DNA of 64,000 bases from Macrostomum lignano. Lineage: Eukaryota. The stretch's first letter is position 1; each line of letters begins with the position of its first letter. The notes under the pieces were generated by a model that saw nothing but the letters and a program-made list of their open reading frames with translations, did no database searches and had not been told where the DNA came from. Below, piece by piece: positions 12,261 to 64,000 of this stretch. The stretch covers positions 62,001 through 126,000 of the forward strand of contig NIVC01001620.1 in NCBI GenBank assembly GCA_002269645.1. Direction: 5' to 3'. Made by a program: the position numbers and the translations under genes.

Positions 12261-21499
<9,239 letters not shown>

Positions 21500-29272: not shown

Positions 29273-29498
29273 GAATGCCACACTGTGACCAGATAGACTC
29301 TGCAGAGTCAATAATCAATGTAATTCCATGCAACATATCCAATTCCAGAGTGTCAGCACGAGGCAACAGCTCTGATGGGAAATTGTTTATTTAGTAGTTA
29401 ACAATTTTGGTAAACCTACACCACAGAAGCCTTAAACAGTACTTAGATGTGTTTTATCGCTAATAACTGTCAATTTTTCTCTTCAACGCCCAGATACT

Positions 29499-30573
29499 CT
29501 ATCTGGTCTTCCTCGACTGGATGACCTTGGGATGCGACAGCGCCTTGTGGGACTGGATCAGCATGAGCAGAGGAAACACAACCCACAGGAAGTTAAAGAA
29601 GAACAGGTGGAACCAAACTTTGAAGGGGTCGTCAGTCAGGTTCTTGTTGCCGGACAGCCACTCGGGTGCGAAAGTCATCCAGTCTGAAAACGAAGTCGAG
29701 AGGTTCTAGTTGACATGAATAGCAACACACCTCAGTCAAATTTAGTATACGTGGACTAGCAAATTAGACCCCGGGGGACCTAACCTTTCGTCGTGATCTC
29801 TTGAAAAACCACTAATATTAAATTTGAGAAGTTCCAAATCCTTATAGTTCAGAATTTACCGCTGTCAGCAGAAAAATATCATTTCAAGAGTTTTAAAGTT
29901 TTCAGCATTTTTAGAGTCATATATACAGTATTCGTATTTTGAAGTGCTAAAAAGGCTGAATTATAGTGGCAATTTTTTAAAGAAAGATCAGAAAAGCGAA
30001 AGAAAAGATCAGAAAGCGATATATACTAGCTACTTATTAAGTAGTGCCGCCAACTTTGCTAAGATATTTCGGTTCTGTACAAAATCTTGTTACAAGTATT
30101 TATGACGAGTTAATCCATTTTTTAACTTACTCCCGTAGAGCTCGCAGGTGCAGAGTACGACTTGCATAAAGTGCCTATTAGGACTGTGAGTCTTAATGGC
30201 CCAGATGATTGCGAAACACAGACTGCCGTCTAGTAGCACGGTGACAATCTCCATGGCAACGATGTTTTGCTCAGCCCACAGCCAGCGGACATCGGCGGCA
30301 CCGTACTCCTTCCCTGGGGACGGCGAGGATGCGCTCAGGGGGATCAGTTCAGAATTCAGCGATATAGGTTCAGGGAGAGTGATGGGTTCAGTTATGAGAA
30401 GTTAAGTCTGAATGTAATGCATAAAATTAAAAGGCGTTAAGAAGGCGTATTTTAATGAAGAATAAATTGACTTAGATCAATCATCCGCTTCATCATTGCT
30501 TACAAACGTGAGCCAGAGGTCCAGTAGCATTCTCCACCGTTGTAGTCAAAGAATAGTACACAAACCGACCCTC
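29499..30573 (-). other. ebpl: Duplicate of EBPL exons 2-4 (30504-30573, 30131-30313, 29499-29683) lacking exon 1; probably an assembly duplicate
   Basis: Matches the exons at 34374-35450; lies inside the gap-spanning duplication. Confidence 0.75.
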
Positions 30574-30671
30574 CTGCATAAATTAGATTGTTGAATACTA
30601 AATTAAGCGTTTAACTTTCCATATTTAAAAAACTGCTTTTAACAGTGTGTAACAATTTCCTAAACAATATT

Positions 30672-32090
30672 TTCACTAGGCCGAAATTTCACTTTGCCGA
30701 AAGCATCTTCCTTCATAAGGCCGAAACTTCATTAGGCTGAAACTTCACTTTGCCGAAAAATCATTTAGCATAGTCTTTCTCTAGGCCGAAACTTCACTAG
30801 GCCGAAACTTCACTAGGCCGAAACTTCACTTTGCCGAAATGACTAGCATGCTCTTTCAAAAGGCCGAAACTTCACTAGGCCGAAACTTCGCTTTGCCGAA
30901 AAATCATTTTAGCAGCCTCTTTCACTAGGCCGAAACTTCACTAGGCCGAAACTTCACTAGGCCGAAACTTCACTAGGCCGAAACTTCACTAGGCCGAAAC
31001 TTCACTAGGCCGAAAATTCACTAGGCCGAAACTTCACTAGGCCGAAATGACTAGCACGCTCTTTCATAAGGCCGAAACTTCACTAGGCCGAAATGACTAG
31101 CACGCTCTTTCATAAGGACGAAACTTCACTAGGCCGAAACTTCACTTTGCCGAAATGACTAGCACGCTCTTTCATAAGGCCGAAACTTCACTAGGCCGAA
31201 ATGACTAGCACGCTCTTTCATAAGGACGAAACTTCACTAGGCCGAAATGACTAGCACGCTCTTTCATAAGGACGAAACTTCACTAGGCCGAAATGACTAT
31301 AGCACGCTCTTTCATAAGGACGAAACTTCACTAGGCCGAAATGACTAGCACGCTCTTTCATAAGGACGAAACTTCACTAGGCCGAAATGACTATAGCACG
31401 CTCTTTCATAAGGACGAAACTTCACTAGGCCGAAATGACTAGCACGCTCTTTCATAAGGACGAAACTTCACTAGGCCGAAATGACTAGCACGCTCTTTCA
31501 TAAGGACGAAACTTCACTAGGCCGAAATGACTATAGCACGCTCTTTCATAAGGACGAAACTTCACTAGGCCGAAATGACTAGCACGCTCTTTCATAAGGA
31601 CGAAACTTCACTAGGCCGAAATGACTATAGCACGCTCTTTCATAAGGACGAAACTTCACTTTGCCGAAATGACTAGCACGCTCTTTCATAAGGCCGAAAC
31701 TTCACTAGGCCGAAATGACTAGCACGCTCTTTCATAAGGACGAAACTTCACTAGGCCGAAATGACTAGCACGCTCTTTCATAAGGACGAAACTTCACTAG
31801 GCCGAAATGACTAGCACGCTCTTTCATAAGGACGAAACTTCACTAGGCCGAAATGACTAGCACGCTCTTTCATAAGGCGAAACTTCACTAGGCCGAAATG
31901 ACTAGCACGCTCTTTCATAAGGACGAACTTCACTAGGCCGAAATGACTAGCACGCTCTTTCATAAGGACGAAACTTCACTAGGCCGAAATGACTAGCACG
32001 CTCTTTTCATAAGGACGAAATTCACTAGGCCGAAATGACTACACGCTCTTTCATAAGGACGAAACTTCACTAGGCCGAAATGACTAGCAC
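30672..32090. repeat. 16-bp/46-bp composite array, copy 1 (left arm of the foldback element, cut by the gap)
   Basis: CACTAGGCCGAAACTT monomers grading into 46-bp units. Confidence 0.93.
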
Positions 32091-32120
32091 NNNNNNNNNN
32101 NNNNNNNNNNNNNNNNNNNC
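32091..32120. other. Assembly gap (30 N)
   Basis: Run of N. Confidence 1.
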
Positions 32121-34373
32121 GCTCTCATTTTTTCCTGATGCCCGAGAGAGTACATGCACTCCTCGTACTTCACAAGCGGTACTCGTTTTAATGCGCAGAT
32201 CGCAGACTTATTAAATTTTCTCTCATCATGTCGATATCCGCGATTTCTATTTGCCAAGAGTTCACCTCCACAAACAAATTAGAAAACATTTGCCAATCCG
32301 AAATCATGTTTTCGTGCATTTTGGCTTACAAGTCCATGAGTTTTTAGCGCGTTTGCTAGAAATCTGTCGCTTTGTTGTTTTTTGTTGCATGCACTTTTTC
32401 ATCAGCTCATTGATGCGCCCGGTCATCTGTCTATACATTTATTATCCTATACCTATTATTAACATTTATTGCGTACTCATTTGTGATGGATCTTATTGCT
32501 TGAACCTCCAATTGTTATTTTATTAATTACTCTTACCTGTACCTCTAAAGCGTTTATGCACTCTTAATGCCCCGGAATTTATTGAAAGAATACAAGCAGT
32601 GCGTATAGTACCTGAATCGTTCGATGGATTAAATTTAATTTAAATTAGTGCCAAGTACTCCTAAGGATAAAAAAACAAAACGACAGTAAAACAAATGTTT
32701 TATCTACACATGTACGAGCGTGTGGTTTTTTCTAGCACTAAAGCTGTCTAGAAATTACGGTTTTGGCACGAATTTAAATTCTATTTAGCTATTTAGTGAA
32801 CGATTCTCATCTTCAATCACATTATTAATGATTAAAACGAAAACAATAGGCAGTATAAAAATATTGCTTAAAAGTATCTTTCGTATTATTCTTTAGCAGG
32901 CTACGATCGCTAGCTAAAAGCAAAAAAATGACAGTAAAAACTGAGCAGCCAGCCTTCTGCTATCTGCTCAGGGTTTCAATTGAGCCATAGACTCAACTGA
33001 TTATTAGCTGTACGCTCTCTCAATAGAAAACATTTTACTGCTTGCTCTTTTTCGACTCGAGGAGGGGGGGGGGGGTAACAGCGAGAGGGCAAATGCTGCA
33101 GATCACTACAGCATGCTTGAGAGTCAGCTCATATCTTTGTGGCTCACCCAAAGTGCCAGCTCGCTTAGTTTCCAACAGCTTCATTGATAAGACGCCCGCC
33201 TCTGCCACTGGTAAAACCGGTCTCGGTGAACTTTGCCGCATTACTCTCGTATTATAGTCACAGCTAGTCATTCAGTCACAGCGAAGTAACAGACAGTTGG
33301 GGCAGAACAAGGTCGATTGTGGTCGCTAATGCACAATCTAAGGCTTCTTCTTGCTTAGTTTAACTTATGGGTTATAAGAATGGCAATTGGAGTCATAAAG
33401 TTCGATTCCCTTAGCCCTGCTAGTTGCTAGGACTACTCAAACTCGAATGGCCTCTACATGTAACAGTTGATGTACAAGTAATAAGCTCTATCGTTCTACG
33501 AGTATTTGCAATTTTTAGGAGCTATAATGAAAGTAAAAAGTATTTTTATCATGCTTTAGTCAAAAAATGTAACCTGGCTATACCAGTCGTAACTGTCACT
33601 TGCTAGTACTACACGGTCACCAGTGCTATACTGTCACCAGTGCTACACGGTCACCAGTGCTACACGGTCACCAGTGCTACACGGTCACCAGTGCTACACG
33701 GTCACCAGTGCTACACGGTCACCAGTGCTATACTGTCACCAGTGCTACACGATCACCAGTGCTATACTTTCACCAGTGCTACACGATCACCAGTGCTACA
33801 CGGTAACCAGTGCTACACGGTCACCAGTGCTACACGGTCACCAGTGCTACACGGTCACCAGTGCTACACGGTCACCAGTGCTACACGGTCACCAGTGCTA
33901 CACGGTCACCAGTGCTACACGATCACCAGTGCTATACTTTCACCAGTGCTACACGATCACCAGTGCTACACTGTCACCAGTGCTACACGATCACCAGTGC
34001 TATACTTTCACCAGTGCTACACGATCACCAGTGCTACACGGTAACCAGTGCTACACGGTCACCAGTGCTACACGGTCACCAGTGCTACACGGTCACCAGT
34101 GCTACACGGTCACCAGTGCTACACGGTCACCAGTGCTACACGGTCACGAATGCCACACTGTGACCAGATAGACTCTGCAGAGTCAATAATCAATTTAATT
34201 CCATGCAACATATCCAATTCCAGAGTGTCAGCACGAGGCAACAGCTCTGATGGGAAATTGTTTATTTAGTAGTTAACAATTTTGGTAAACCTACACCACA
34301 GAAGCCTTAAACAGTACTTAGATGTGTTTTATCGCTAATAACTGTCAATTTTTCTCTTCAACGCCCAGATACT

Positions 34374-37300
34374 CTATCTGGTCTTCCTCGACTGGATGAC
34401 CTTGGGATGCGACAGCGCCTTGTGGGACTGGATCAGCATGAGCAGAGGAAACACAACCCACAGGAAGTTAAAGAAGAACAGGTGGAACCAAACTTTGAAG
34501 GGGTCGTCAGTCAGGTTCTTGTTGCCGGACAGCCACTCGGGTGCGAAAGTCATCCAGTCTGAAAACGAAGTCGAGAGGTTCTAGTTGACATGAATAGCAA
34601 CACACCTCAGTCAAATTTAGTATACGTGGACTAGCAAATTAGACCCCCGGGGGGACCTAACCTTTCGTCGTGATCTCTTGAAAAACCACTAATATTAAAT
34701 TTGAGAAGTTCCAAATCCTTATAGTTCAGAATTTACCGCTGTCAGCAGAAAAATATCATTTCAAGAGTTTTAAAGTTTTCAGCATTTTTAGAGTCATATA
34801 TACAGTATTCGTATTTTGAAGTGCTAAAAAGGCTGAATTATAGTGGCAATTTTTTAAAGAAAGATCAGAAAAGCGAAAGAAAAGATCAGAAAGCGATATA
34901 TACTAGCTACTTATTAAGTAGTGCCGCCAACTTTGCTAAGATATTTCGGTTCTGTACAAAATCTTGTTACAAGTATTTATGACGAGTTAATCCATTTTTT
35001 AACTTACTCCCGTAGAGCTCGCAGGTGCAGAGTACGACTTGCATAAAGTGCCTATTAGGACTGTGAGTCTTAATGGCCCAGATGATTGCGAAACACAGAC
35101 TGCCGTCTAGTAGCACGGTGACAATCTCCATGGCAACGATGTTTTGCTCAGCCCACAGCCAGCGGACATCGGCGGCACCGTACTCCTTCCCTGGGGACGG
35201 CGAGGATGCGCTCAGGGGGATCAGTTCAGAATTCAGCGATATAGGTTCAGGGAGAGTGATGGGTTCAGTTATGAGAAGTTAAGTCTGAATGTAATGCATA
35301 AAATTAAAAGGCGTTAAGAAGGCGTATTTTAATGAAGAATAAATTGACTTAGATCAATCATCCGCTTCATCATTGCTTACAAACGTGAGCCAGAGGTCCA
35401 GTAGCATTCTCCACCGTTGTAGTCAAAGAATAGTACACAAACCGACCCTCCTGCATAAATTAGATTGTTGAATACTAAATTAAGCGTTTAACTTTCCATA
35501 TTTAAAAAAACTGCTTTTAACAGTGTGTAACAATTTCCTAAACAATATTTTCACTAGGCCGAAATTTCACTTTGCCGAAAGCATCTTCCTTCATAAGGCC
35601 GAAACTTCATTAGGCTGAAACTTCACTTTGCCGAAAAATCATTTAGCATAGTCTTTCTCTAGGCCGAAACTTCACTAGGCCGAAACTTCACTAGGCCGAA
35701 ACTTCACTTTGCCGAAATGACTAGCATGCTCTTTCAAAAGGCCGAAACTTCACTAGGCCGAAACTTCGCTTTGCCGAAAAATCATTTTAGCAGCCTCTTT
35801 CACTAGGCCGAAACTTCACTAGGCCGAAACTTCACTAGGCCGAAACTTCACTAGGCCGAAACTTCACTAGGCCGAAACTTCACTAGGCCGAAAATTCACT
35901 AGGCCGAAACTTCACTAGGCCGAAATGACTAGCACGCTCTTTCATAAGGCCGAAACTTCACTAGGCCGAAATGACTAGCACGCTCTTTCATAAGGACGAA
36001 ACTTCACTAGGCCGAAACTTCACTTTGCCGAAATGACTAGCACGCTCTTTCATAAGGCCGAAACTTCACTAGGCCGAAATGACTAGCACGCTCTTTCATA
36101 AGGACGAAACTTCACTAGGCCGAAATGACTAGCACGCTCTTTCATAAGGACGAAACTTCACTAGGCCGAAATGACTATAGCACGCTCTTTCATAAGGACG
36201 AAACTTCACTAGGCCGAAATGACTAGCACGCTCTTTCATAAGGACGAAACTTCACTAGGCCGAAATGACTATAGCACGCTCTTTCATAAGGACGAAACTT
36301 CACTAGGCCGAAATGACTAGCACGCTCTTTCATAAGGACGAAACTTCACTAGGCCGAAATGACTAGCACGCTCTTTCATAAGGACGAAACTTCACTAGGC
36401 CGAAATGACTATAGCACGCTCTTTCATAAGGACGAAACTTCACTAGGCCGAAATGACTAGCACGCTCTTTCATAAGGACGAAACTTCACTAGGCCGAAAT
36501 GACTATAGCACGCTCTTTCATAAGGACGAAACTTCACTTTGCCGAAATGACTAGCACGCTCTTTCATAAGGCCGAAACTTCACTAGGCCGAAATGACTAG
36601 CACGCTCTTTCATAAGGACGAAACTTCACTAGGCCGAAATGACTAGCACGCTCTTTCATAAGGACGAAACTTCACTAGGCCGAAATGACTAGCACGCTCT
36701 TTCATAAGGACGAAACTTCACTAGGCCGAAATGACTAGCACGCTCTTTCATAAGGCCGAAACTTCACTAGGCCGAAATGACTAGCACGCTCTTTCATAAG
36801 GACGAAACTTCACTAGGCCGAAATGACTAGCACGCTCTTTCATAAGGACGAAACTTCACTAGGCCGAAATGACTAGCACGCTCTTTCATAAGGACGAAAC
36901 TTCACTAGGCCGAAATGACTAGCACGCTCTTTCATAAGGACGAAACTTCACTAGGCCGAAATGACTAGCACGCTCTTTCATAAGGACGAAACTTCACTAG
37001 GCCGAAAAATCATTTTTGCAGCATCCTTACTAGTTACTATGGTCCAAAGGGGATGTGAACTTAAGCGTCCAAAATGGAACCGCAAGCAGTGACGATTTCT
37101 CTGCACCAGTTTCTTTATTCTGACCTAAGTGTTACTCTGCTACCAAAGTGGGCCAGCACGATATGGTCACTCAGTTTTTTGTATGGAATATTTTTAACAT
37201 TTCTGACTTCATTTGGGGGTTAACTTTGATTGCTTATTATTTTCATTGCATTTTCTGTCTCAGTCGGATGGACTTTTAAGTTGTAGAGTGCTCGTATGCT

Positions 37301-39408
37301 CGCATGGGCTCCTTTGAAAGTATGCAGATTTGCCTGGATTCCGATTCATAGAATATGCATGGCTCTTAGTCTCTAATTCTTTGGCTTCTGTGAAATTCAA
37401 CCCGTATGGTTTTAGTATCAAAAAAGACAATGTACAATATTCTCTCTCCTCTCTTCCCCATTTTTTCTTAAATTGCTCGCTCATACCCTTCAGTCTAGCC
37501 GCTAGCGGGAACGAGCCCTATGCGGGCCTGGTCTGTTGTCTGTTATTGGTCTGTGCAAGGACCCGTAGATCTAGTAGGTTCTAGTTCTAGATCTCTAAGG
37601 ACTGTTTAATGATTAATGATTAATTATAATTATTAATTATTAATCAATAATAATAATAATAATAATCATCATCATCATCATATAATGATAATAATGATTA
37701 ATGATTAAAGATTCAGTTTAATGTTACCATGTTAGTTTCGGCAAAGTGAAGTTTCGGCCTAGTGAAAGAGGCTGCTTTTCGGCGAAGTGAAATTTCGGCC
37801 TAATGAAAGCGCCCCCTAAGAACCACAAGTTTACAAGTTCACGTTCTATAAACACGAGATGGTCCTGGTCCTTTTACAGATGTAGTGGTCCCTGAGCACT
37901 CGTCGGTTTTGATCTTCTAGTGGTGCCTGGGAGGGGCTGGTTGTGGTCCTTCTAGTGGTGCCTGGGAGGGGCTGGTTGTGGTCCGTCTAGTGGTGCCTGG
38001 GAGGGGCTGGTTGTGGTCCTTCTAGTGGTGCCTGGGAGGGGCTGGTTGTGGTCCTTCTAGTGGTGCCTGGGGGGGGGCTGGTTGTGGTCCTTCTAGTGGT
38101 GCCTGGGAGGGGCTGGTTGTGGTCCTTCTAGTGGTGCCTGGGAGGGGCTGGTTGTGGTCCTTCTAGTGGTGCCTGGGAGGGGCTGGTTGTGGTCCTTCTA
38201 GTGGTGCCTGGGAGGGGCTGGTTGTGGTCCTTCTAGTGGTGCCTGGGAGGGGCTGGTTGTGGTCCTTCTAGTGGTGCCTGGGAGGGGCTGGTTGTGGTCC
38301 TTCTAGTGGTGCCTGGGAGGGGCTGGTTGTGGTCCTTCTAGTGGTGCCTGGGAGGGGCTGGTTGTGGTCCTTCTAGTGGTGCCTGGGAGGGGCTGGTTGT
38401 GGTCCTTCTAGTGGTGTCTGGGAGGGGCTGGTTCTGGTCCTTCTAGTGGTGCCTGGGAGAGGTTGGTTGTGGTCTGGTCCTTCTAGTGGTGCCTGGGAGG
38501 GGCTGGTTGTGGTCCTTCTAGTGGTATCTGGGAGGGGCTGGTTCTGGTCCTTCTAGTGGTGCCTAGGAGGAGTTGGTTGTGGTCCTCCTAGTAGTGTCTG
38601 GGAGAGGCTGGTTGTGGTCCTTCTAGTGGTGCCTGGGAGGGGCTGGTTGTGGTCCTTCTAGTGGTGCCTGGGAGAGGTTGGTTGTGGTCTGGTCCTTCTA
38701 GTGGTGCCTGGGAAGTTGGTTGTGGTCCTTTTAGCGGTGCCTGGGAGGGGCTGGTTGTGGTCCTTCTAGTGGTGTCTGGGAGGGGCTGGTTGTGGTCCTT
38801 CTAGTGGTGCCTGGGAGGAGTTGGTTGTGGTCTGGTCCTTCTAGTGGTGCCTGGGAAGTTGGTTGTGGTCCTTTTAGCGGTGCCTGGGAGGGGCTGGTTG
38901 TGGTCCTCCTAGTAGTGTCTGGGAGAGGCTGGTTCTGGTCCTTCTAGTGGTGCCTGGGAGGGGCTGGTTGTGGTCCTTCTAGTGGTGCCTGGGAGGGGCT
39001 GGTTGTGGTGCTTCTAGTGGTGCCTGGGAGAGGTTGGTTGTGGTCTGGTCCTTCTAGTGGTGCCTGGGAAGTTGGTTGTGGTCCTTTTAGCGGTGCCTGG
39101 GAGGGGTTGGTTGTGGTCCTTCTAGTAGTGTCTGGGAGGGGTTGGTTCTGGTCCTTCTACCGGACATTTTGTCGGCGGTTGACCCCGTTTAGACGTCCTT
39201 GGGCAGCCGCTAGCTAGGCAGTAAGAGCAAAACTTACCATAAGGAAGTGTGTGAGGCCGTTGTAGACTAGCCAGAACACCAGCAGGCGCTCGTTAGTTTT
39301 CACTAGCCGGAAAGCTGCTAGACCGGCGATGGCCACGTAGACAACCACCTCGGCCAGGCCCAGGCCAAGCTCGGGCGTCCACTTGATTGAATCCAGCACG
39401 GCTTGCAT
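34374..39408 (-). CDS. ebpl: Emopamil-binding-protein-like (EXPERA domain) membrane protein, about 200 aa. Exons 39238-39408, 35381-35450, 35008-35190, 34374-34558
   Basis: Spliced product ...FWLVYNGLTHFLM|EGRFVY...AHV(W)KEYGAADVRW...MEIVTVLLDGSL...RHFMQVVLCTCELYG(N)WMTFAPEW...FFNFLWVVFP...RKTR matches EBPL motifs (WKEYGKADARW, ELYGCWMTF, PEW); all junctions GT-AG and in phase. Confidence 0.92.
35549..37808. mobile_element. Foldback-like element in EBPL intron 1: long tandem-repeat left arm (35549-37010), short inverted right arm (37735-37808)
   Basis: Reverse complement of 37735-37808 aligns over about 70 bp with TTTCACTAGGCCGAAATTTCACTTTGCCGAAA... at 35549; no target-site duplication seen. 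Confidence 0.6.
37915..39160. repeat. 35-bp minisatellite (GGTCCTTCTAGTGGTGCCTGGGAGGGGCTGGTTGT) in EBPL intron 1
   Basis: Tandem units, homogeneous at left and diverged at right. Confidence 0.97.
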
Positions 39409-39858
39409 GCTTTTATCGTGATTTTAGATTGCTTGATTACTAGTTTGTTTTAGGGGTTGATAAATGGTTTGTTAGCTCCTACAAATAGAGGCTAGTAAAA
39501 AATTCTACTTTTTCTAGCCAACCAAGCCCCAAACCTTTAACAGACGGAAATCTAGCCAAGCTGAATTAAACTGAACTTGCTGACTACTGCAAAACTAGTA
39601 GCGAGCGGGGGGGGTAGAGTTCGTTCAGAGCCGACAGCAGCAATGTACACTCCGCGCAGTGGTGCTGAGTGTACATTGGCCCTCCCTCCCCTCTCTGTCC
39701 AACTCCCAGTCCAGGTGTACGAAGATAGCATTGAATAGTAAAAAAGCTGATAACAGCTCAACGCTGCTCAAGCAAGATAGGAACTGCGTTACAAAAACAA
39801 GTTTTACGAGCTACTACTGGAATTTTTTTACTAATATTAGTACAGTACAGCATACATA

Positions 39859-40270
39859 CTAGCAATCTTCGCCCCCCGATGGGGGACATCTGGATAGTCA
39901 GGATAGAATCCTTGTTCTTTACAAATAAAGACTCCAAGAGAAATAACAAATAGACAGCGAAATAAAGCCTTCATGAAAAAGCAACAGACATTTCCTCTAA
40001 AAACAAAACATCCCAAGACAGCAAGCATCCCCAGACAGCATTCAAGCATCGATCCCTAAATAGCAAACATCACCCAGACTGCAAGCATCCCCCAGATAGC
40101 AAGCATCCACCCGATAGCAAGCAACCCCAGATAGCAAGCATCCCCCAGATAGCAAGCATCCCCCCACGCCAAAAAGGTTACACCCCCACCAGTCCATAAA
40201 ATACAAGGACTGAATACATAAACATCCCCAGGTAAAACTTTGGCACCCCCAAAATGAAAATCCTGGATAC
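39859..40270 (-). mobile_element. Second Helitron-like element, related to 5591-6340
   Basis: Minus strand GTCCCCC-ATC-GGGGGGC hairpin, 8 nt, CTAG|T at 39859-39862; internal ATAGCAAGCATCCCCCAG repeats (40010-40175) resemble 6300-6345. Confidence 0.6.
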
Positions 40271-40616
40271 AACACTGTTCGAAGAGACGGTTCTACTAAT
40301 GATAATTAATAAGGATATTTTCGTTCCAGAGTACTGAGTTCAGCCAAAAGCACCAAATTTAGTATATGGTGGGCTAGTAAATTAGACTCCTCCAGCTGGT
40401 GGCAGCTAACCTTTCGTGATCCGTCCACATGCACATACTTAGTCGTTAGTCAGTTGCATGAAGCTTTGGCGCTGCCCATCTTCTAGGTGAGTCATTTTCC
40501 CGGTGATCTTTTCCCGGTGACTTTTTCCCGGTGGACCTTTTCCCGATGACGCTTTACCGATGACGTTTTCCTAGTGGACGTTTTACCGATGACGTTTCTC
40601 TGGTGGACGTCTTACC

Positions 40617-41199
40617 CATAGGCGTAGGAACAGGGGGGGGGGCAGTGGGGCCATGGCCCCCCCACTTTTCAAAATGGGGGGGGGGGCAGTAATGGTATCT
40701 GGCCCCTCCACATTTTAAATGTAAAATGTAGACTTCTTGCTTATTTTTGGTTTTTGCTGCTTTGCATGAATGCATTTTGCTGCAGGGCGACAAAACATAG
40801 CGCCTGTAGCGCCAAAATGAGTGCCTGCAGCGCTAAAATGCGGGCCTGCGGCGCCAAAATGAGTGCCTGCAGCGCTAAAATGCGGGCCTGCGGCGCTAAA
40901 ATGAGTGCCTGCGGCGCTAAAATGAGTGCCTGCGGCGCCAAAATGAGTGCCTGCAGCGCTAAAATGCGGGTCGGCGGCGCTAAAATGAGTGCCTCCGGCG
41001 CTAAAATGAGTGCCTGCGGCACTTTATAAAATGAGTGCTGACAAGATGGATTCTGAAAATAATCGGTACATGATAATGTGCATTTTCCATATAAAAAAAT
41101 CTAACTCGACGGGGGCGTGCGCCCTGTGCGCCCCCCCCCCCTAAATCCGTCACTGAACCTGCCCCCCCCCCCAGTTTTTGAAACGTTCCTACGCCTATG
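40617..41199. mobile_element. 583-bp MITE, 15-bp perfect TIR CATAGGCGTAGGAAC, 8-bp target-site duplication (P or hAT superfamily), internal 21-bp array at 40800-41035
   Basis: TIRs at 40617-40631 and 41185-41199; flanks GTCTTACC / GTTTTTCC each differ by one base from the host unit GTTTTACC. Confidence 0.85.
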
Positions 41200-41370
41200 G
41201 TTTTTCCGATGACGTTTTTCTGGTGGACGCACCGATGAAGTTTTCCTAGTGGACCTTTTCACGGTGACCTTTTACCGGTTATCTTTTCCCGTGAGACCTT
41301 TTCCCAGAGACGTTTTACCGATGACGTTTCCCTGGTGGACGTTTTACCGATGACGTTTCCCTGGTGGACG

Positions 41371-41409
41371 CAAGGACTACTTAAGTATACGTTACTTTAG
41401 TCGTCCTTG
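41371..41409. mobile_element. 39-bp hairpin micro-element with perfect 8-bp target-site duplication
   Basis: CAAGGACTACTTAAGTA-TACGT-TACTTTAGTCGTCCTTG flanked by GGTGGACG on both sides. Confidence 0.8.
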
Positions 41410-41521
41410 GGTGGACGTTCTACCGATGAAGTTGTACCGATGACGTTTTATCGGTCAGGTTTGCCTGACAACATTTGCTTTGGTGATGAAAATACTTAGG
41501 ACTGCGTCCTAATAATAACGG

Positions 41522-41567
41522 CAAGGACTACTTAAGTAGTATATATACGTTACTTTAGTCGTCCTTG
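41522..41567. mobile_element. 46-bp second copy of the hairpin micro-element
   Basis: Same 17-bp arms, 12-nt spacer, flanks AATAACGG / AATAACTG (7 of 8). Confidence 0.78.
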
Positions 41568-42710
41568 AATAACTGCAGCAAATGTAATAACGGAATATAA
41601 TAATAAAAAGTCAATAGAAAAAATTATTAAGAACACTATCATTCTACTAATAGTAACACGTACGGTGAGAGCCCAATGTGTAGTTGTTATTGTAGACATA
41701 TGATAGTAAAAAGCACGTTTTCATCACAAAGCTTACTAAAAACAGTTAGCCAGAGACAGCTGTTAATACGAGCTAGCCTGACGACTATTTAAAAGCTCAG
41801 GGACTTTCGTGCAGGTATCAGTGAAACTACGAATAGGTTAATCGTCCCAGGGAAAACGTCACTGTGAAAACGTCACCGTGAAAATGTCACCGGAAAAAAG
41901 TTAACGGAGCGGGCAAGAATTACAGACCCACCGAAAATCAAGGCCGCAGTCAACCCACAGCCAACGAGGAGGCAAACAATATCCTCATTCCGCTGATCCC
42001 TGAGCACGCGCACGGATAAGTACACATCCAATGAGTGCACAGCGGCCCCGACTTTCGCGTCTGTGCCTTGGTGGTTGACTCGGGTGAGCGTGAATTGCAA
42101 GACAAGCCGCCCCCAGGCCAGTTTGCTGTGCACGAGTTAAGTATTAAATGTGGCCATGGGCGAGACGTGTGGGTTACTCTCAGCTAGCCCTCCCGCATAT
42201 TTCCTAACGGCATTGTTGCTGTACCGGCGTAGAACACAAAGTTTATCCAGCTGGTTCAAATATGGCTAGCACTTTTTGGGAGATGTAGGAGCAACAAAAG
42301 GCAAAGAATTATATAAACTCTGGAAACTGTTGTTCCCCGTATGATTCAGTGTGGTATCTTCGTTTCCTAGAAAAGGAAGTTGATCAATATTAGTGAATTT
42401 TATTTAAACAGTAATTCAACAGTATATTGCACACAGAGCGTGGCTTTTACGTATATCTACAGGAAAAATTGTTAAATGAACCAATACAAGCTGCATGACA
42501 TGCACGTTCAGAACAATACATCCGAAGTTGAAAATTTTAATTGGATAAACCCAGCCAAATAATGCACCGATATGCAATTTGTTTTTTTTGTATGTATCAG
42601 ACTCTGGTAATTAACAACAAATAAACCTTGCTCTGACCTTAAGAGAAATTAATTATCTCGAGTAATATACGAGCTAATATGAATGTAATGTAAATGTAAC
42701 ATGAAAAACT

Positions 42711-43235
42711 TCAAGAAGCCGGTGACCTTAAAAATCCAGCATTTTCAACACCTTTTAGGCCAGTCGACGGCACTTCGAGATGCAGCGACTGCTCTTGACG
42801 AATATCCGGCTCCTCCTGCTTCTGCTGCTGCTGCTGCTGCTGCATGGCGATGCGGCTCATTCGTCGGTGCTGAGCCAGCGCCGCCGCCCTGGCCGTCACG
42901 CTATCCAGCGACACCACCGACGAGTCGTCTTCATCGTTATCATCTTCGTCTTCATCGTCGTCGGCGTTGTCTCCGTAGCTTCTACCTGCAGCTTCCTGTC
43001 CAGAAGCGGCTGGCGGTCCATGAGCTGCCGGAGATCTTCGGCGACGACGTCGCGAGATTGCGATGCAATTGGCGACCGTCACGGCAAGTAGCAGCAGAAC
43101 GATGGTCAGCACGAACATGATCACCGCGACCAGCAGGTTGCCTGATTCGGAGTTGTCCCGACCTTTTGCTTCGTTGCTGCCAGGTGGTTCCGGGTAGGTT
43201 TTGTCGCAGGACAGCCACGACTGGTTGCCACCCAT
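42711..43235 (-). CDS. Small single-pass membrane protein without signal peptide, about 174 aa
   Basis: ATG at 43235; one hydrophobic helix LLVAVIMFVLTIVLLLLAVTVANCIAI followed by RRRRRR, an acidic tract, poly-Q and GVENAGF near the C-terminus. Confidence 0.7.
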   Translation of the reverse strand: MGGNQSWLSCDKTYPEPPGSNEAKGRDNSESGNLLVAVIMFVLTIVLLLLAVTVANCIAISRRRRRRSPAAHGPPAASGQEAAGRSYGDNADDDEDEDDNDEDDSSVVSLDSVTARAAALAQHRRMSRIAMQQQQQQQKQEEPDIRQEQSLHLEVPSTGLKGVENAGFLRSPAS

Positions 43236-44169
43236 TGTTGGCAGATTGAGCAATCTAGCTTCAGATCTTGATTGCGGGTTTGAAAAGACGCTCCGTTGGA
43301 GTTTGAAAACCCCTTGCTCGTAGATCTGTGGTTTGAGTTGCGAGTGCCAAGATGCGTGAGTTGATTGGTTGCGTCAGTGTTAGGTTTTGCCTGCTTGATT
43401 CTACACGTATTCGACACCTTCCTGGACGAACCATTCATTCATTGACGCATTGACATATAAAGGCCTATCTATCTGGCGTTAAATGCCCGTTTAGGTCTAA
43501 TTTTTCCCTAGCTGGTTCTTATTGCAATCAATTTCAGGATAGCCGTCTACTTGACGGGTTTCTGGTTAAATTTGATTGCAGGATGGCTGTCTACCTGAAA
43601 GGCTTCTGGTTAAATTTGATGCAGGATGGCTGTCCAACAGGTCTCAGCAGGTTTACGAATGTCGAGCTGCTTATTATAAGGTTTATCTGATTTCTTCACA
43701 GACAGCTATAATTACCTGTATTAATTATTTGAATGGCCTTACGGAAGCGGTTTCACCTGTACGTACAAGCAGATTTTTTAGTACAGTGTACACAGAATGT
43801 AATTACCGGTAGTTCACTGACTGCCTTTCACTTCGAAACACTCAAATCCGTGTTGTACCGCTTTATCAAAGCCTTTCAGACAACACTCGATCGTCAACGC
43901 AGTTTTGTAGTGGCGATCGATATAGACCAAAACCAATCGATTCCCTGACTCGAGAGCGAGGCCGCGGGATTTGCAATATCGGCCTCCCTTACCTTACCCT
44001 CCACCCACCACCCCGACGTGGTGTCTGTTATCTGGAGCAAACAAATCAAAATCATTCCCAACTCAAAACCACCTGGCAGAGCGCTCAGCGCTGCACGGAT
44101 GCCGCCACCAAAGCTGCTCATGCCTTCCAATTCAATCTATAAAGGCTTTTTTTCTCCGCAACTGTGTCT

Positions 44170-45342: not shown

Positions 45343-48300
45343 TTAGTACAGCCAATGCACTGGCAGCCATTGGTGCTCGGTGGTCAGGGACTCCAGCACG
45401 GCTTCCAACTGTTCGTAGCAGCTGTCGAAATTGTCGCAGATGAGCACGGAGTCGAACAGGTGCCGATAGGTTCGCTCAATGTGAATAGACTGCTGGATTG
45501 ACTTGCGAAAGTCTTCGTCCTGGAGTTTATAACAAAATTGCATCAGCAAATAATTAGCTTTTTATAGATACTTGGACTGGAAGCAGACAAAGCACCAATC
45601 ATATCAACCAGGGACCTCTATGGACACGTGGACTGAAAGCAAACTCAGCACCAATCATAAATCTACCAGGGACCTCTCTAGATACCTGGACTGGAAGCAG
45701 ACTCGGCACCGATCCTAAATCCACCAAGAACCATTCTTGATACCTGGATCAAAAGCAGATTAGCACCAATCCTATATCCACCAGGGACCCCTAGATTACC
45801 TAGACTAGAAGCAGCATAGCACACATTAAAATCTACCAGGTACTTCTGGATATCTGGTTTCTACTCCAATTTTCAGAGGCCCGTGTATATTTATAATTAC
45901 TCACCCGTTTGAAGTTATTAGTGAGCCCGAGCGAGCTGCCCAGCTCGTACATGGACTTCATGCAGTCGAAACTGGGCGCGGCAATGAACACAACGTACGG
46001 CTTGAATTCCGCTGTGCAAACCTGGCGGGCTCGGTCCGGCGCGCAGTCAACTAGCAGAGTGCGGTCCTGCGGACGGGAGTGGATTGCTAGTCTAGCGCTG
46101 TTCGTTCTGTATTATAATGGATTGCTAGTCTAGCGCTGTTCGTTCTGTATTATAATGGATTGCTAGTCTAGCGCTGTTCGTTCTGTATTATAATGGATTG
46201 CTAATAAATCTCTATAGCACCAGAATAGAATGGATTGCTAATCTATCTCTTATAGCAAGCGATTAGAATGGATTGCTAATCTATCTCTCTAGCAAGCGAT
46301 TAGAATGGATTGCTAATCTATCTCTCTAGCAAGCGATTAGAATGGATTACTAATCTATCTCTCTAGCAAGCGATTAGAATGGATTGCTAATCTATCTCTA
46401 TCACACCCGATTAGAATGGATTGCTAATCTATCTCTATCACATTCGAATAGAATGGATTGCTAATCTATCTCTTATAGCAAGCGATTAGAATGGATTGCT
46501 AATCTATCTCTATAGCAAGCGATTAGAATGGATTGCTAATCTATCTCTATCACATTCGAATAGAATGGATTGCTAATCTATCTCTTATAGCAAGCGATTA
46601 GAATGGATTGCTAATCTATCTCTCTAGCAAGCGATTAGAATGGATTGCTAATCTATCTCTCTAGCAAGCGATTAGAATGGATTGCTAATCTATCTCTATC
46701 ATACCCGATTATAATGGATTGCTAATCTATCTCTATCACACCCGATTAGAATGGATTGCTAATCTATCTCTATCACACCCGATTAGAATGGATTGCTAAT
46801 CTATCTCTATCACACCCGATTAGAATGGATTGCTAATCTATGAAAAGCCATTGACCATCGCACCTGCTTGGCCATGGAGCGCAGTGTGTCGATCTTGATG
46901 CCGTACATGGAGCCGTTGAGCTGGCCGTATTCCAGATACGCACCCTTGTGCACGTCCACCTCCATCTCCTGCTGCCCGGCGAACAGGTACCTCTCGCCGT
47001 TGACTTCGCCCTGCCTTGGCGGCCGGCTGGTGTGCGGAATGGGCCTGGCGTAGGTCTCCGGGTGGTGCTTGATCAGCTGGGTGATTAGGGACGCTTTGCC
47101 AACGCCGGGTGCGCCTAGCAACAGAATCAGGGAGCGACGAAACGGCGGCACCCGAGCCACCTCCTGGTAGATGGTCAGGTCGGACCGCTGAAATGACTGG
47201 GCCACGTTGGCCTTGTAGGCAACTCGAACCGTCTTCTTCTTCTTAGCCAGGCCGAGGCCCATCACCTTGTAGTTGATGGCGTCCTTGTCCGGCGTGGACT
47301 GCAAGAAGGCCGTCCGGCGCTCCTGCAGCGTCAGCGAGGGGATCAGGCCGGCCCGGCCGGAGTTATCCCAGCGCCTGGCCTGCCACCAGTTCGGATCCTC
47401 CTGCGATAGCACCTGCAGAACGTCGCCAACAGTGAATTTTAGGCCGGCCTCTTTGCAGGGGATCAAGCCGTCGTACTGGGGATCGTAGGAGAACAGCGCC
47501 TTCACGTAGGTCTGCGGGGAGTCGGTGAGAGACGGAGTGGCTAGTCCTCGCGCCTGACTACTTATTGTGAGTAGTCAGTCTAACACTTTGTCTAGCTATA
47601 GTAGTACGAATAACTGGGATGAATTCATCCCTACTACTTGTAGGTACTATTTGTGAGTAGTAGGGTGACTTCTTCCCTTGATACTACTTGTGAGTAGTAG
47701 GGTGACTTCTTCCCTTGGTACTACTTGTGAGTAGTAGGGTGACTTCTTCTCTTGGTACTACTTGTGAGTAGTAGGGTGACTTCTTCCCTTGGTACTACTT
47801 GTGAGTAGTAGGGTGACTTCTTCCCTTGGTACTACTTGTGAGTAGTAGGGTGACTTCTTCTCTTGGTACTACTTGTGAGTAGTAGGGTGACTTCTTCCCT
47901 TGGTACTACTTGTGAGTAGTAGGGTGACTTCTTCCCTTGGTACTACTTGTGAGTAGTAGGACGAATTATTGTCTGGGTACTACTTGTATGTACACATCGT
48001 TGGAATACTCGAAAAAAATTTACAACACAGAAATATAATCAAAATTTCTAACATCATTTGAGATTTTCTACTAATAAAATAGAATAGAATATCCAAATAC
48101 CGCAAAGTAATGTATGAATTTATGTAGTCTCTGACGGCTAAGAAACTACAGAAAGCGGGTTTGACAACAAAAGAAAATTTGTTGACACAACAACAATAAA
48201 ATACAACGGCAAGTGCATAATATTTCTTTATAAAATACTTACGAATGTTTCCTGGAATCGGTTTTTCAAATTAGTACTAGGCTGTCATGTTGGATTCTTA

Positions 48301-51300
48301 TTATTGAACTACTTTGACTTATGGATTGCTAATCTATCCCAGGAATGCAGGATTGGAGTGGATTGCTAATCTATCCCAGAAATGCAGGATTAGAATGGAT
48401 TGATAATCTATTTCACAAATGCAGGATTGGAGTGGATTGCTAATCTACGAGTATCCCAGGAATGCAGGATTGGAGTGGATTGCTAATCTATCCACCAGTA
48501 TTGCAGATTCTCCCGCAGAAGCAGAAGTCGTTAAGAACTCACCTGGCTGCCCTTGCCGGCCTCATAGAATCCGGAGCGCACCTTGAGGGTGACATTGCCG
48601 CTGGCCTTGCGCATCACCTGCTGCAGCTTCTCGGGCGAGTCAATCGGAATTCCGTTCACCTCTTTGATGACGTCATAGGGCTTGAGCACGCCCTGCTGCT
48701 CTATACGCGAGCCGGCCATGATACGTTCGACAACAATGTCCAGGCCGCTCTGGCCCGTGTTGTCGTCGTACCACTCGATGGTGCCGACTGTGATGCCGAG
48801 GTCTTCGCCGGGCATCTGGGCGCGATGAGGCAGACGGAAAGAGTGCGGGGGGAGGAGAAAATGCGCGTCATTGGAAGTTTATCAGCGAGTCTTGGGTTGA
48901 GGGCCGGAAGGGAAGGCATAGAAGGTTGTACGCTCGTAAATGTAGATTTAAATTGGGACGGGAGGTCAAGTCACAGAGAGATGGGGTGGTCAAGTCACAG
49001 AGAGATGGGGAGGTTAAGTCACAGAGAGATGGGGAGGTCAAGTCACAGAGAGATGGGGAGGTCAAGTCACAGAGAGATGGGGAGGTCAAGTCACAGAGAG
49101 ATGGGGAGGTCAAGTCACAGAGAGATGGGGAGGGTCAAGTCACACAAAGGGAGAGGAGGGAGGTCACGTCACAGAAAGGGAGAGGAGGGGAGGTCAAGTC
49201 ACAGAAAGGGAGAGGAGGGGAGGCAAGTCACAGAAAGGGAGAGGAGGGGAGGTCAAGTCACAGAAAGGGAGAGGAGGGGAGGCAAGTCACAGAAAGGGAG
49301 AGGAGGGAGGTCACGTCACAGAAAGGGAGAGGAGGGGAGGTCAAGTCACACAAAGGGAGAGGAGGGGAGGTCAAGTCACACAAAGGGAGAGGAGGGGAGG
49401 TCAAGTCACAGAAAGTGAGAGGAGGGGAGGCAAGTCACAGAAAGGGAGAGGAGGGGAGGCAAGTCACAGAAAGGGAGAGGAGGGAGGTCACGTCACAGAA
49501 AGGGAGAGGAGGGGAGGTCAAGTCACACAAAGGGAGAGGAGGGGAGGTCAAGTCACACAAAGGGAGAGGAGGGGAGGTCAAGTCACAGAAAGGGAGAGGA
49601 GGGAGGTCAAGTCACACAAAGGAAGAGGAGGGGAGGTCAAGTCACAGAAAGGGAGAGGAGGGGAGGTCAAGTCACAGAAAGGGAGAGGAGGGGAGGTCAA
49701 GTCACAGAAAGGGAGAGGAGGGGAGGTCAAGTCACAGAAAGGGAGAGGAGGGAGGTCAAGTCACAGAAAGGGAGAGGAGGGAGATCAAGTCACAGAAAGG
49801 GAGAGGAGGGGAGGTCAAGTCACAGAAAGGGAGAGGAGGGGAGGTCAAGACAGAGAAAAATGCCTAGATCAGATGAAAGCGGGAAACACTGTCAGCAGAT
49901 GCTCTGGCAAAGAGACGGCAGCCCTGCCTACAAACCTTGGCAAAGGCGACCATCTTCTGAGGCCTGTCGAACTCGTCCAGATCGTCCATCATGGGGTCGC
50001 CTGTCGGCTGCGGCTGCAGTGTTTGTGCCGCGCCAAACGCGTCGTCGTCGTTGCCGTCGGAGAAGACGGGGGTCGCAGCCGAAGCTGCCCGGCCAGACAG
50101 CGGCCCAGGCGACTCGGCCGAAGCTCCGCCGACCGCCGACTCGTGCAGGCCGGCCGAGGCGGCGGCGACTTCGTCGTTCTCGGCGTTTCGCGCCTTCCTC
50201 AACCGGTCGCCCTCGTAGTTCCGGTGCCCGATGTCTTCTAGAGCTTCAACGAAGGTGTTGAGCCGGCCGGAGGCCAGCAACTCGTAGAGGTCGTTGGCTT
50301 CGTCGTCTGTGGCCGCGACAGTCTCCAGCTGCTCCAGGGTGTCGTGCAGCGAGCGCACGTACTCTGTCTGTGATACGCCTGCGGTGGATGAATGGAATGT
50401 GAGCTTTAAATTAGTCGCAATCTTCCCTAGGTGGCGTACACAGAATCTGCTTTGGGTGGATGGGGCGCCAATCCTCAGGACGTGTTTTTGGGGCGCCACT
50501 GTCTCTTGGAGGGCGCCCCTGTCTCTTGGAGGGCGCCCCTGTCTCTTGGTGGGCGCCACTGTCTCTTGGAGGGCGCCCCTGTCTCTTGGTGGGCGCCACT
50601 GTCTCTTTGTGGGCGCCACTGACTCTTGCTGGGCACCACTGACTCTTGCTGGGCGCCACTGACTCTTGCTGGGCACCACTGACTCTTGCTGGGCGCCACC
50701 GTCTCTTGCTGGGCGCCACCGTCTCTTGCTGGGCGCCACTGTCTCTTGGAGGGCGCCCCTGTCTCTTGGTGGGCGCCACTGTCTCTTTGTGGGCGCTCCT
50801 GTATCTTGCTGGGCGCCCCTGTCTCTTAGTGGACGCCACTAACTCTTGCTGGGCGTCACTGTCTCTTGCTGGGCGCCACGGTCTCTTGCTGGGCGTCACT
50901 GTCTCTTAGTGGACGCCACTAACTCTTGCTGGGCGTCACTGTCTCTTGCTGGGCGCCACCGTCTCTTGCTGGGCGTCACTGTCTCTTGGATACTTAGATA
51001 CGCGACTGACTCTTGCTGGGCTAGAATGACTAAAAAATCAAATTCAAAAATAAAATCAAACAAATCGTCATCTTCCTTACCTGGAAACGCTTCGCTGTCG
51101 GGTCCGGCCTTGCGGCGCTGCTTCTGAAGCCGCTTGAGGCTGTCGTGCATGGCCAACAGGCTGCGCAGGTCGCCGCCTTGAAGAAAGTTGGACAGCTCAT
51201 GCACCTCCGGCTCGCCTTCGAAGTGCTGCTCGAGGCGCTCGCTCAGCTCGCCGAGGTTTCGGGCCGACTTTGAAGCCCGCGGCTTTGAAGGCTTCGGCGG

Positions 51301-51336
51301 CTTTGGTGGCTTGGGCGGCGGTGGTGGCGGTGGCAT
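45343..51336 (-). CDS. MAGUK p55 subfamily scaffold (L27-L27-PDZ-SH3-HOOK-GK; MPP2/MPP6-like). Exons 51081-51336, 49936-50378, 48543-48815, 46864-47511, 45905-46066, 45343-45519
   Basis: PDZ GEDLGITV...IVVERIMAGS; SH3 YVKALFSYDP..D.LIPCKEAGLKF..GDVLQV...DPNWWQA; GK HTSRPPRQGEVNGERYLF, PYVVFIAAP; C-terminus QWLPVHWLY; junction phases consistent. Confidence 0.92.
45570..45850. repeat. Degenerate repeat of about 50 bp in the last MAGUK intron
   Basis: About 5 copies of GGACTGGAAGCAGAC...CACCAATC...CCAGGGACC. Confidence 0.75.
46078..46840. repeat. 37-41-bp minisatellite with core ATGGATTGCTAATCTATCTC
   Basis: Tandem units filling a MAGUK intron. Confidence 0.95.
47625..47990. repeat. 37-bp minisatellite (TACTTGTGAGTAGTAGGGTGACTTCTTCCCTTGGTAC)
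   Basis: Tandem units visible. Confidence 0.93.
48325..48495. repeat. Short degenerate array sharing the TGGATTGCTAATCTA core with 46078-46840
   Basis: Four to five copies of the core with different spacer sequence. Confidence 0.85.
48955..49850. repeat. Purine-rich 25-29-bp minisatellite (GGTCAAGTCACAGAAAGGGAGAGGAGGGGA)
   Basis: Tandem units in a MAGUK intron. Confidence 0.95.
50455..51020. repeat. 20-bp minisatellite (GGGCGCCACTGTCTCTTGCT)
   Basis: Tandem units in the first MAGUK intron. Confidence 0.95.

Positions 51337-59416: not shown

Positions 59417-64000
<4,584 letters not shown>

What the first reader, a model, noticed from the sequence alone, without database searches (positions are those of the whole stretch)
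41371..41567. 39-bp and 46-bp hairpin micro-transposons with independent 8-bp target-site duplications
Each consists only of 17-bp imperfect arms (15 of 17 complementary) around a 5- or 12-nt spacer, yet each has its own different duplication (GGTGGACG perfect; AATAAC(G/T)G), which indicates two separate insertions. This is well below typical MITE size and would be missed by standard annotation; it raises the question of how a transposase synapses ends 39 bp apart.
Basis: partly seen in the sequence, partly recalled or inferred. Interest (0 to 1): 0.7.

Follow-up and report, generated by a model that had tools for sequence, protein, structure and literature searches.

The report
Tiny transposon end-pairs in flatworm DNA
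Two 39- and 46-base hairpin inserts in flatworm (Macrostomum lignano) DNA are real transposon-type insertions made only of the two ends of a cut-and-paste transposon. It could not be decided here whether they ever moved at that size or are what is left of a longer element.

Summary
At 41371-41409 and 41522-41567 lie two inserts with identical 17-nt arms (15 of 17 complementary) around 5- and 12-nt centres. One is flanked by a perfect 8-bp duplication, the other by a 7-of-8 one.

The window is nuclear DNA of the flatworm Macrostomum lignano. Copy 1 sits in a 29-bp tandem array. Removing the insert plus exactly 8 bases is the only deletion that restores the array's register, so that duplication is real.

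An 8-bp duplication with CAAGG...CCTTG tips is the signature of hAT or P-type cut-and-paste transposons. Two separate integrations 151 bp apart are therefore well supported.

That the 39/46-bp units themselves transpose is not shown. The copies differ only by a 7-nt TA-flanked indel. Characterised hAT and P elements need more than 100 bp per end to move.

I rate remnants of a longer element (abortive gap repair or excision scars, possibly copied from the neighbour) at about 0.45. I rate true micro-transposons at about 0.33.

No other copy exists in about 130 kb of accessible M. lignano DNA. A genome-wide search, which would decide the matter, was not possible with these tools.

The parts
41363..41370 (+). 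Left copy of the target-site duplication of copy 1 (GGTGGACG).
   Evidence: The register test shows that exactly 8 bp are duplicated.
41371..41387 (+). Left terminal inverted repeat of copy 1, CAAGGACTACTTAAGTA. The tip CAAGG fits YARNG, and the arm contains the palindrome TACTTAAGTA (ACTT|AAGT).
   Evidence: (I13).
41388..41392 (+). Centre of copy 1, TACGT. The junction can also be read as left 15-17 nt plus right 22-24 nt overlapping at TA.
   Evidence: D5 and D7 overlap by 2 nt.
41393..41409 (+). Right terminal inverted repeat of copy 1, TACTTTAGTCGTCCTTG.
41410..41417 (+). Right copy of the target-site duplication of copy 1 (GGTGGACG).
41514..41521 (+). Left copy of the target-site duplication of copy 2 (AATAACGG).
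41522..41538 (+). Left terminal inverted repeat of copy 2, identical to that of copy 1.
   Evidence: (D7, I19).
41539..41550 (+). Centre of copy 2, GTATATATACGT. It equals the centre of copy 1 plus 7 nt (GTATATA) bounded by TA repeats.
   Evidence: D5: the 24 nt TATACGTTACTTTAGTCGTCCTTG are shared by both copies.
41551..41567 (+). Right terminal inverted repeat of copy 2, identical to that of copy 1.
41568..41575 (+). Right copy of the target-site duplication of copy 2 (AATAACTG, 7 of 8).
41200..41460 (+). Host 14/29-bp tandem array (unit GACGTTTTACCGATGACGTTTCCCTGGTG) into which copy 1 inserted. Its sister part at 40495-40616 serves as an in-window picture of the unoccupied site.

Best explanation
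What is shown or near-shown:
- The two hairpins are end-only derivatives of one cut-and-paste DNA transposon family of the hAT/P kind (8-bp target duplication, CAAGG...CCTTG tips, 17-bp imperfect inverted ends).
- It integrated at two sites 151 bp apart in repeat-rich, non-coding DNA of Macrostomum lignano.
- Confidence in this part is about 0.85.

What is inferred (confidence about 0.45):
- The inserts did not arrive as 39/46-bp units.
- A longer element, carrying the internal sequences its transposase needs, inserted at one site and hopped locally to the other.
- When it excised from each site, the double-strand gap was repaired incompletely.
- Either a few tens of bases were copied inward from each end off the sister chromatid, or the end bases left by a staggered P-type cut were kept.
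- The two short tails were then joined at the self-complementary TA/TATA run next to the ends.
- That left the duplication, 15-22 nt of the left end and 22-29 nt of the right end.
- The near-identity of the two centres comes either from the same TA microhomology being used twice, or from the second gap being repaired by copying the remnant 150 bp away (template-directed replacement, known for P elements; from memory).

On this reading the remnants are inert scars, and no transposase ever had to pair ends 39 bp apart.
For: Integration signature:
- The 8-bp duplications are perfect and 7 of 8, each significant locally.
- Only an 8-base removal restores the host array register.
- The sister array shows the unoccupied sequence.
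- These are the only YARNG-tipped inverted-repeat-plus-duplication candidates in about 130 kb.

One source family:
- Both copies carry the same two arm mismatches and are 39 of 39 identical apart from one 7-nt indel.

Junction anatomy fits end joining at microhomology:
- Copy 1 is the left 17 nt and the right 24 nt overlapping by TA.
- Copy 2 has a (TA)4 run at the junction.

Enzymology from papers:
- hAT elements make 8-bp duplications and have YARNG tips (PMC3014272).
- Hermes has 17-bp imperfect inverted ends differing at two positions, yet needs about 220 bp of each end in cells. Tol2 needs 150-200 bp (10.1101/2022.09.16.508221).
- P transposase makes 8-bp duplications, hops locally, and cuts 17 nt inside each end, so 17 nt of each end stay at the donor site (PMC7776569).
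- Abortive gap repair plus microhomology joining is the accepted route from long elements to miniature ones, including Made1 (PMC3814204).

Copy number:
- No further copy was found in about 130 kb of M. lignano DNA, so this is not a very abundant MITE family.
Against: - No longer element with these ends was found; none could be searched for genome-wide.
- Two independent truncations ending within 7 nt of each other is a coincidence, unless the TA microhomology or copying from the neighbour is invoked.
- A single micro-element that moved once explains the 39-of-39 identity more simply.
- A pure P-type scar keeps at most 17 nt per end, but both copies share 22-24 nt on the right side. The simple scar model therefore needs some repair synthesis or a shared filler.
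- hAT excision as known leaves no element bases at the donor site.
- No hAT or P transposase domain is present among the window's open reading frames.
Confidence: 0.45

Rival explanations
1. True micro-transposons. An end-only element of about 46 bp arose once by miniaturisation of a longer element. It was then mobilised in trans as such and hopped about 150 bp. The 7-nt central indel arose during gap repair of the donor or by slippage in the TA-rich hairpin tip. The ends might be paired on a cruciform or between sister copies rather than by looping.
For: - The two copies are 39 of 39 identical, with the same arm mismatches and the same right-hand 24 nt. They differ only by one TA-bounded 7-nt indel. 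This is what one copying event predicts.
- Each has its own 8-bp duplication.
- Each arm carries an AAGT motif followed by AT-rich sequence, which is the minimal BED-domain site described for Hermes. This is a lead only.
- An 80-bp element made of two ends plus 6 bp (Made1) is an established MITE family (PMC1784062).
Against: - 39-46 bp is about half the size of the smallest established eukaryotic MITEs: Made1 at 80 bp and Microuli at about 59 bp (from memory).
- Characterised hAT and P elements need more than 100 bp of each end in vivo.
- Ends this close cannot be looped together, and IS50 transposition is severely impaired at 64 bp or less (Goryshin et al. 1994, from memory).
- Only two copies, side by side, were seen in about 130 kb, with no sign of amplification.
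Confidence: 0.33
2. Ordinary short palindromic MITE copies (some 60-300 bp, with an AT-rich centre) inserted at both sites. Each then lost its centre by replication slippage or hairpin processing of an unstable palindrome, converging on a short stable stem.
For: - The whole 46-bp copy is a near-palindrome (18 of 23 positions, I7) with a (TA)4 centre.
- The two copies differ exactly in that centre.
- The host region is a nest of inverted repeats and arrays.
Against: - No longer family member was seen.
- Convergence to within 7 nt would again be needed.
- There is no direct evidence for a longer palindromic parent.
Confidence: 0.1
3. Not transposition at all. The palindromes and flanking repeats arose by chance in low-complexity DNA, by templated insertion during break repair, or as an assembly or library artefact.
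For: - The region is extremely repetitive.
- GGTGGACG is part of the host array unit, and AATAAC recurs locally.
Against: - The register test singles out exactly 8 bp.
- The empirical flank-match rates are about 0.2% each.
- The arms are foreign to the flanks and unique in the window.
- The blind scan finds only these two outside satellites.
- The arms match no sequencing adapter that I can recall (from memory).
- Templated insertion does not make 8-bp duplications.
Confidence: 0.04

Closest known systems
Excision scars of Drosophila P elements (17-nt staggered donor cleavage followed by end joining)
   Same: - The 8-bp duplication is kept on both sides.
- About 17 nt of each inverted end is retained and joined with a few extra bases.
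- The elements hop locally (PMC7776569). The typical scar sequences are recalled from memory.
   Different: - Both copies here share 22-24 nt on the right side, more than a 17-nt stagger leaves.
- No THAP-type transposase or long P-like parent is known for these ends.
- The host is a flatworm, not a fly.
hAT superfamily non-autonomous elements (Hermes, hobo, Ac/Ds and their MITEs)
   Same: - 8-bp target duplication and YARNG tips (CAAGG).
- Short imperfect inverted ends. Hermes also has 17-bp ends differing at two positions.
- An AAGT motif followed by AT-rich sequence near the end.
   Different: - Known hAT elements need roughly 150-220 bp of each end to move.
- hAT excision leaves no element bases behind.
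- The two duplications fit neither the nTnnnnAn nor the nnnTAnnn target preference.
Made1 / MiHsmar1, the 80-bp human mariner MITE
   Same: - It is made of two inverted ends with only 6 bp between them.
- It is a near-perfect palindrome that folds as a hairpin.
- It arose from a long element by an internal deletion at a microhomology (PMC1784062; PMC3814204).
   Different: - It is twice as long and has a TA duplication of the Tc1/mariner type.
- It is an established MITE family derived from Hsmar1 (PMC1784062) and is present in many copies in the human genome (copy number from memory), so its mobility is not in doubt.
Deletion derivatives formed by abortive gap repair (Ds from Ac, internally deleted P elements, the Gnome/Elf/Goblin MITEs from Ozma)
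   Same: - Both ends and the duplication are kept and the interior is lost.
- The junction lies at a short microhomology, sometimes with inserted bases (PMC3814204).
   Different: The known derivatives keep hundreds of bases. Here only 15-29 nt per end remain.

Membership tests
hAT superfamily | 8-bp target-site duplication | tested here: met
   Copy 1 is 8 of 8 and copy 2 is 7 of 8. The register test shows exactly 8 bp. The feature is as stated in PMC3014272.
hAT superfamily | Terminal motif YARNG and short (about 10-25 bp) inverted ends | tested here: met
   The tips are CAAGG...CCTTG, with 17-bp arms and 2 mismatches. The motif is from PMC3014272.
hAT superfamily | An autonomous partner with the same ends that encodes a BED / RNase-H-like / hAT-dimerisation transposase | not testable with these tools
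   No collection that holds the M. lignano genome can be searched by DNA. There is no hAT domain among 89 window ORF segments. No longer element with these ends occurs in about 130 kb.
hAT superfamily | Target preference nTnnnnAn (Ac family) or nnnTAnnn (Buster family) | tested here: inconclusive
   GGTGGACG and AATAACGG fit neither pattern on either strand (preferences). However, there are only two sites, and the preference is statistical rather than defining.
P superfamily | 8-bp target-site duplication and inverted ends | tested here: met
   The feature is from PMC7776569. The CANRG tip rule of Repbase is recalled from memory, and CAAGG fits it.
P superfamily | Donor scar keeps at most 17 nt of each end (17-nt staggered cleavage) | tested here: inconclusive
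   The complementary arms are exactly 17 nt in both copies. However, both copies share 22-24 nt on the right side (D5), which exceeds 17 unless those bases are a shared filler.
P superfamily | A THAP-domain, GTP-dependent transposase partner with the same ends | not testable with these tools
   No genome-wide search was possible. There is no THAP or P-transposase domain in the window.
MITE (miniature inverted-repeat transposable element) | Small, non-coding, with terminal inverted repeats and a target-site duplication | tested here: met
MITE (miniature inverted-repeat transposable element) | A homogeneous family present in many dispersed copies | tested here: inconclusive
   Only the two adjacent copies occur in the window plus L001, L002 and L004 (about 130 kb). 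This argues against more than about 10,000 copies. The whole genome could not be searched.
Excision or abortive-gap-repair remnant | Both termini and both duplication copies retained, with an internal junction at a microhomology | tested here: met
   In copy 1 the left 17 nt and the right 24 nt overlap by TA. Copy 2 has a (TA)4 run at the junction.
Excision or abortive-gap-repair remnant | A full-length parent with the same termini whose subterminal sequence continues into the remnant's centre | not testable with these tools
   This needs a search of the M. lignano assemblies. The viral, metagenome and prokaryote collections hold nothing related.

The most novel reading that the evidence does not exclude
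The 39/46-bp hairpins are themselves mobile. They would be the smallest eukaryotic cut-and-paste transposons known: two 17-bp ends plus a 5-12-nt centre. A hAT- or P-like transposase would move them by pairing ends that cannot be looped together, for example on an extruded cruciform or across sister copies.
Probability: 0.3. Interest if true: 0.75.

Novelty: new member of a known kind. Interest (0 to 1): 0.35.

Why it matters
- If they are scars, they are a neat natural record of local hopping and incomplete gap repair of a DNA transposon in a regenerating flatworm. They also show that elements under 200 bp were dropped from this genome's published repeat libraries.
- If they are mobile, they would halve the known lower size limit for eukaryotic transposons. 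They would also challenge the view that end pairing needs looped DNA and long subterminal binding sites.
- One genome-wide text search can separate the two readings, which makes this a cheap question to settle.

Tried and rejected
Origin of the window:
- My first guess was a phage or large-virus origin with iterons. I rejected it: there was no phage match, and the window is 100% identical to M. lignano contig NIVC01001620.1.

Search for an empty site in the paralogous loci (about 96% identical):
- L001, L002 and L004 stop short of the site or diverge before it.
- To reach it I rebuilt the spliced 652-aa MAGUK gene next to the site.
- The unannotated 174-aa ORF 1.2 kb from the site is not on record and has no homologues.
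- A homologue search with the MAGUK exon returned no M. lignano protein.

Search for other copies:
- The viral, metagenome and prokaryote collections gave either nothing or 34 chance hits of the 17-mer with no partner arm.
- There are no further arms in the fetched loci.

Other readings considered and rejected:
- One 197-bp composite element spanning 41371-41567: its outer flanks are not duplicated.
- A lone right-arm-like 14-mer at 39188-39201: it has no partner and no duplication, so it is probably chance.
- Rfam and Pfam scans of the window's ORFs gave no RNA family and no DNA transposase.
- SMRTbell and mate-pair adapter sequences, recalled from memory, do not match.

Full report
**What is there.**
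- Reading 41100-41900 shows the two inserts exactly as described.
- Copy 1 (41371-41409, 39 bp) is CAAGGACTACTTAAGTA-TACGT-TACTTTAGTCGTCCTTG, between two GGTGGACG.
- Copy 2 (41522-41567, 46 bp) has the same arms around GTATATATACGT, between AATAACGG and AATAACTG.
- The arms are 15 of 17 complementary, with the same two mismatches in both copies.
- The 17-mer, with up to 3 mismatches, occurs only at these four places in 64 kb (0.24 expected).
- Both copies fold as DNA hairpins well beyond shuffled controls.

**Where the window comes from.**
- An 851-aa ORF is 99% identical to a Macrostomum lignano protein.
- Locus L003 (NIVC01001620.1:105376-127934, assembly GCA_002269645.1) is 100% identical to window 43376-64000. 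The window is therefore NIVC01001620.1:62001-126000, nuclear DNA of a free-living flatworm.
- The window is packed with minisatellites and carries ordinary animal genes (see the items noticed in passing).
- The published repeat annotation of this genome discarded repeat models under 200 bp (PMC5730564), so elements of this size were indeed not looked for.

**Are the duplications real?**
- Copy 1 lies in a 29-bp tandem array whose unit itself contains GGTGGACG, so a flank match alone proves little.
- I joined the flanks after removing the insert plus k bases. Only k = 8 restores the array register (17 of 24 matches, against 9 or fewer for every other k from 0 to 16).
- The sister part of the array, at 40495-40616, reads CTGGTGGACGTCTTACC with one GGTGGACG, like the joined flanks.
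- Empirically, an 8-of-8 flank match occurs at 0.24% of positions in that array. A match of 7 of 8 or better occurs at 0.17% of positions in the AT-rich region around copy 2.
- A blind scan for YARNG-tipped inverted ends next to an 8-bp duplication found only these two in about 130 kb. A scan with any tip found otherwise only satellite artefacts.
- Two separate staggered-cut integrations are thus well supported.

**Search for relatives.**
- No collection that holds M. lignano can be searched by DNA.
- The viral, metagenome and prokaryote collections gave nothing, or chance 17-mer hits without a partner arm.
- Three paralogous or neighbouring loci (L001, L002, L004; about 96% identical to the window) carry no arm. 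None of them reaches the site.
- The paralogue on NIVC01001281.1 follows the window up to 39848 and again from 43531. In the parts I could fetch, it has unrelated sequence in between.
- I rebuilt the neighbouring six-exon MAGUK gene to use as an anchor.
- The window's ORF segments contain no DNA transposase domain.

**How the two copies relate.**
- They are identical at all 39 shared positions.
- Copy 1 equals copy 2 minus seven bases (GTATATA) bounded by TA repeats.
- Equivalently, both share the left 17 nt and the right 24 nt (TATACGTTACTTTAGTCGTCCTTG, D5 and D7). In copy 1 these overlap by TA; in copy 2 a (TA)4 run lies between them.
- Both therefore descend from one source element with asymmetric ends. 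Their internal junctions lie in a self-complementary TA run, the kind of place where two nascent strands can be joined by microhomology.

**Mechanism.**
- The signature is an 8-bp duplication, CAAGG tips and short imperfect ends. This fits hAT (PMC3014272) and also P elements (PMC7776569).
- Known members of both need far more than 17 bp per end to move. Hermes needs about 220 bp per end and Tol2 150-200 bp. P elements have internal transposase-binding sites, and their naturally occurring internally deleted copies are 0.5-2.8 kb long.
- P transposase cuts 17 nt inside each end, so the donor keeps 17 nt of each end beside the duplication.
- Abortive gap repair followed by microhomology joining is the accepted way in which long elements become miniature ones (PMC3814204).
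- I therefore think it most likely (about 0.45) that a longer element inserted, hopped locally and excised twice. Each excision left an end-only remnant joined at the TA run. The second remnant possibly copied the first, which would explain the shared centre.
- The main rival (about 0.33) is that a roughly 46-bp end-only element was itself moved once over 150 bp.
  - It explains the identity of the copies more simply.
  - It is hinted at by an AAGT-plus-AT-rich motif in each arm, like the minimal Hermes BED site.
  - But it asks a transposase to work on ends that cannot be looped together, at half the size of the smallest established MITEs (Made1, 80 bp).
- Palindrome-centre loss from an ordinary short MITE (about 0.1) and non-transposon origins (about 0.04) are the remaining options.

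**Shown and inferred.**
- Shown: the inserts, their arms and the two 8-bp duplications; their uniqueness in the accessible DNA; the relation between the copies; the host organism.
- Inferred: the superfamily (hAT or P, undecided); the existence of a long parent; the repair route; and whether the small form ever moved.

**Verdict.** This is a real and tidy observation. It is most probably a pair of transposon end-remnants, a new member of a known kind. About three chances in ten remain that it is something unusual. A single genome-wide search for the two 17-mers would settle it.

Noticed in passing
window 40616-41200: A 585-bp insert bounded by a perfect 16-bp inverted repeat (CCATAGGCGTAGGAAC / GTTCCTACGCCTATGG). 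It has inner poly-G and poly-C runs and a 21-bp minisatellite. It splits the same 14/29-bp array into two parts. It is possibly another non-autonomous transposon; its duplication is ambiguous (TCTTACC against TTTTTCC).
   Followed up: partly
window 40495-41460 (+) and 41833-41907 (-): The 14-bp units (TTTTCCCGGTGACC-like) form a long array and a short inverted array around an AT-rich 370-bp centre. This is a foldback-like structure that hosts both hairpins.
   Followed up: partly
window 39849-43530, against L004 from 17720 and L002 1-294: This 3.7-kb stretch, which holds the arrays, both hairpins and a 174-aa ORF, has no counterpart at the syntenic place of the paralogous contig NIVC01001281.1 in the parts fetched. 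About 15.5 kb lie between the flanks there.
   Followed up: partly
window 28730-38500: A 4.9-kb tandem duplication full of 16/17/46-bp satellites. Each copy carries an EBP/EXPERA-like exon (30093-30401 and 34970-35278, minus strand). The paralogue has a single copy.
   Followed up: partly
window 60711-63998 (+), running off the window end: A long open frame with endonuclease, reverse-transcriptase and RNase H domains, i.e. a LINE-type retrotransposon. The paralogues have a CwfJ-domain gene called 6.4 and 8.4 kb downstream of the 851-aa gene (L001 18931-22031; L002 from 20981), whereas none is called within 10 kb downstream in the window's own copy (L003).
   Followed up: partly
window about 15572-15976 (+): An exon encoding a complete paired-box (Pax) domain (Pfam E = 2.9e-61).
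   Followed up: partly
window 45343-51336 (-): An MPP/PALS2-like MAGUK gene (L27, PDZ, SH3, guanylate kinase) with six exons and a 652-aa product, rebuilt by hand. Its introns are filled with minisatellites. Two paralogous copies exist on other contigs.
   Followed up: yes
window 42711-43235 (-): An unannotated 174-aa ORF that starts MGGNQS (a possible myristoylation site) and has one transmembrane helix and an acidic tail. It has no homologue in the protein collection.
   Followed up: partly
window 18792-19394: A perfect (AGTA)n microsatellite of about 150 units, 100% pure.
   Followed up: no
window 39188-39201; also L004 at about 17013-17029: A lone 14-mer, TTTAGACGTCCTTG, matches the right arm at 13 of 14 positions and is conserved in the paralogue. 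It has no partner arm and no duplication, so it is probably chance.
   Followed up: partly
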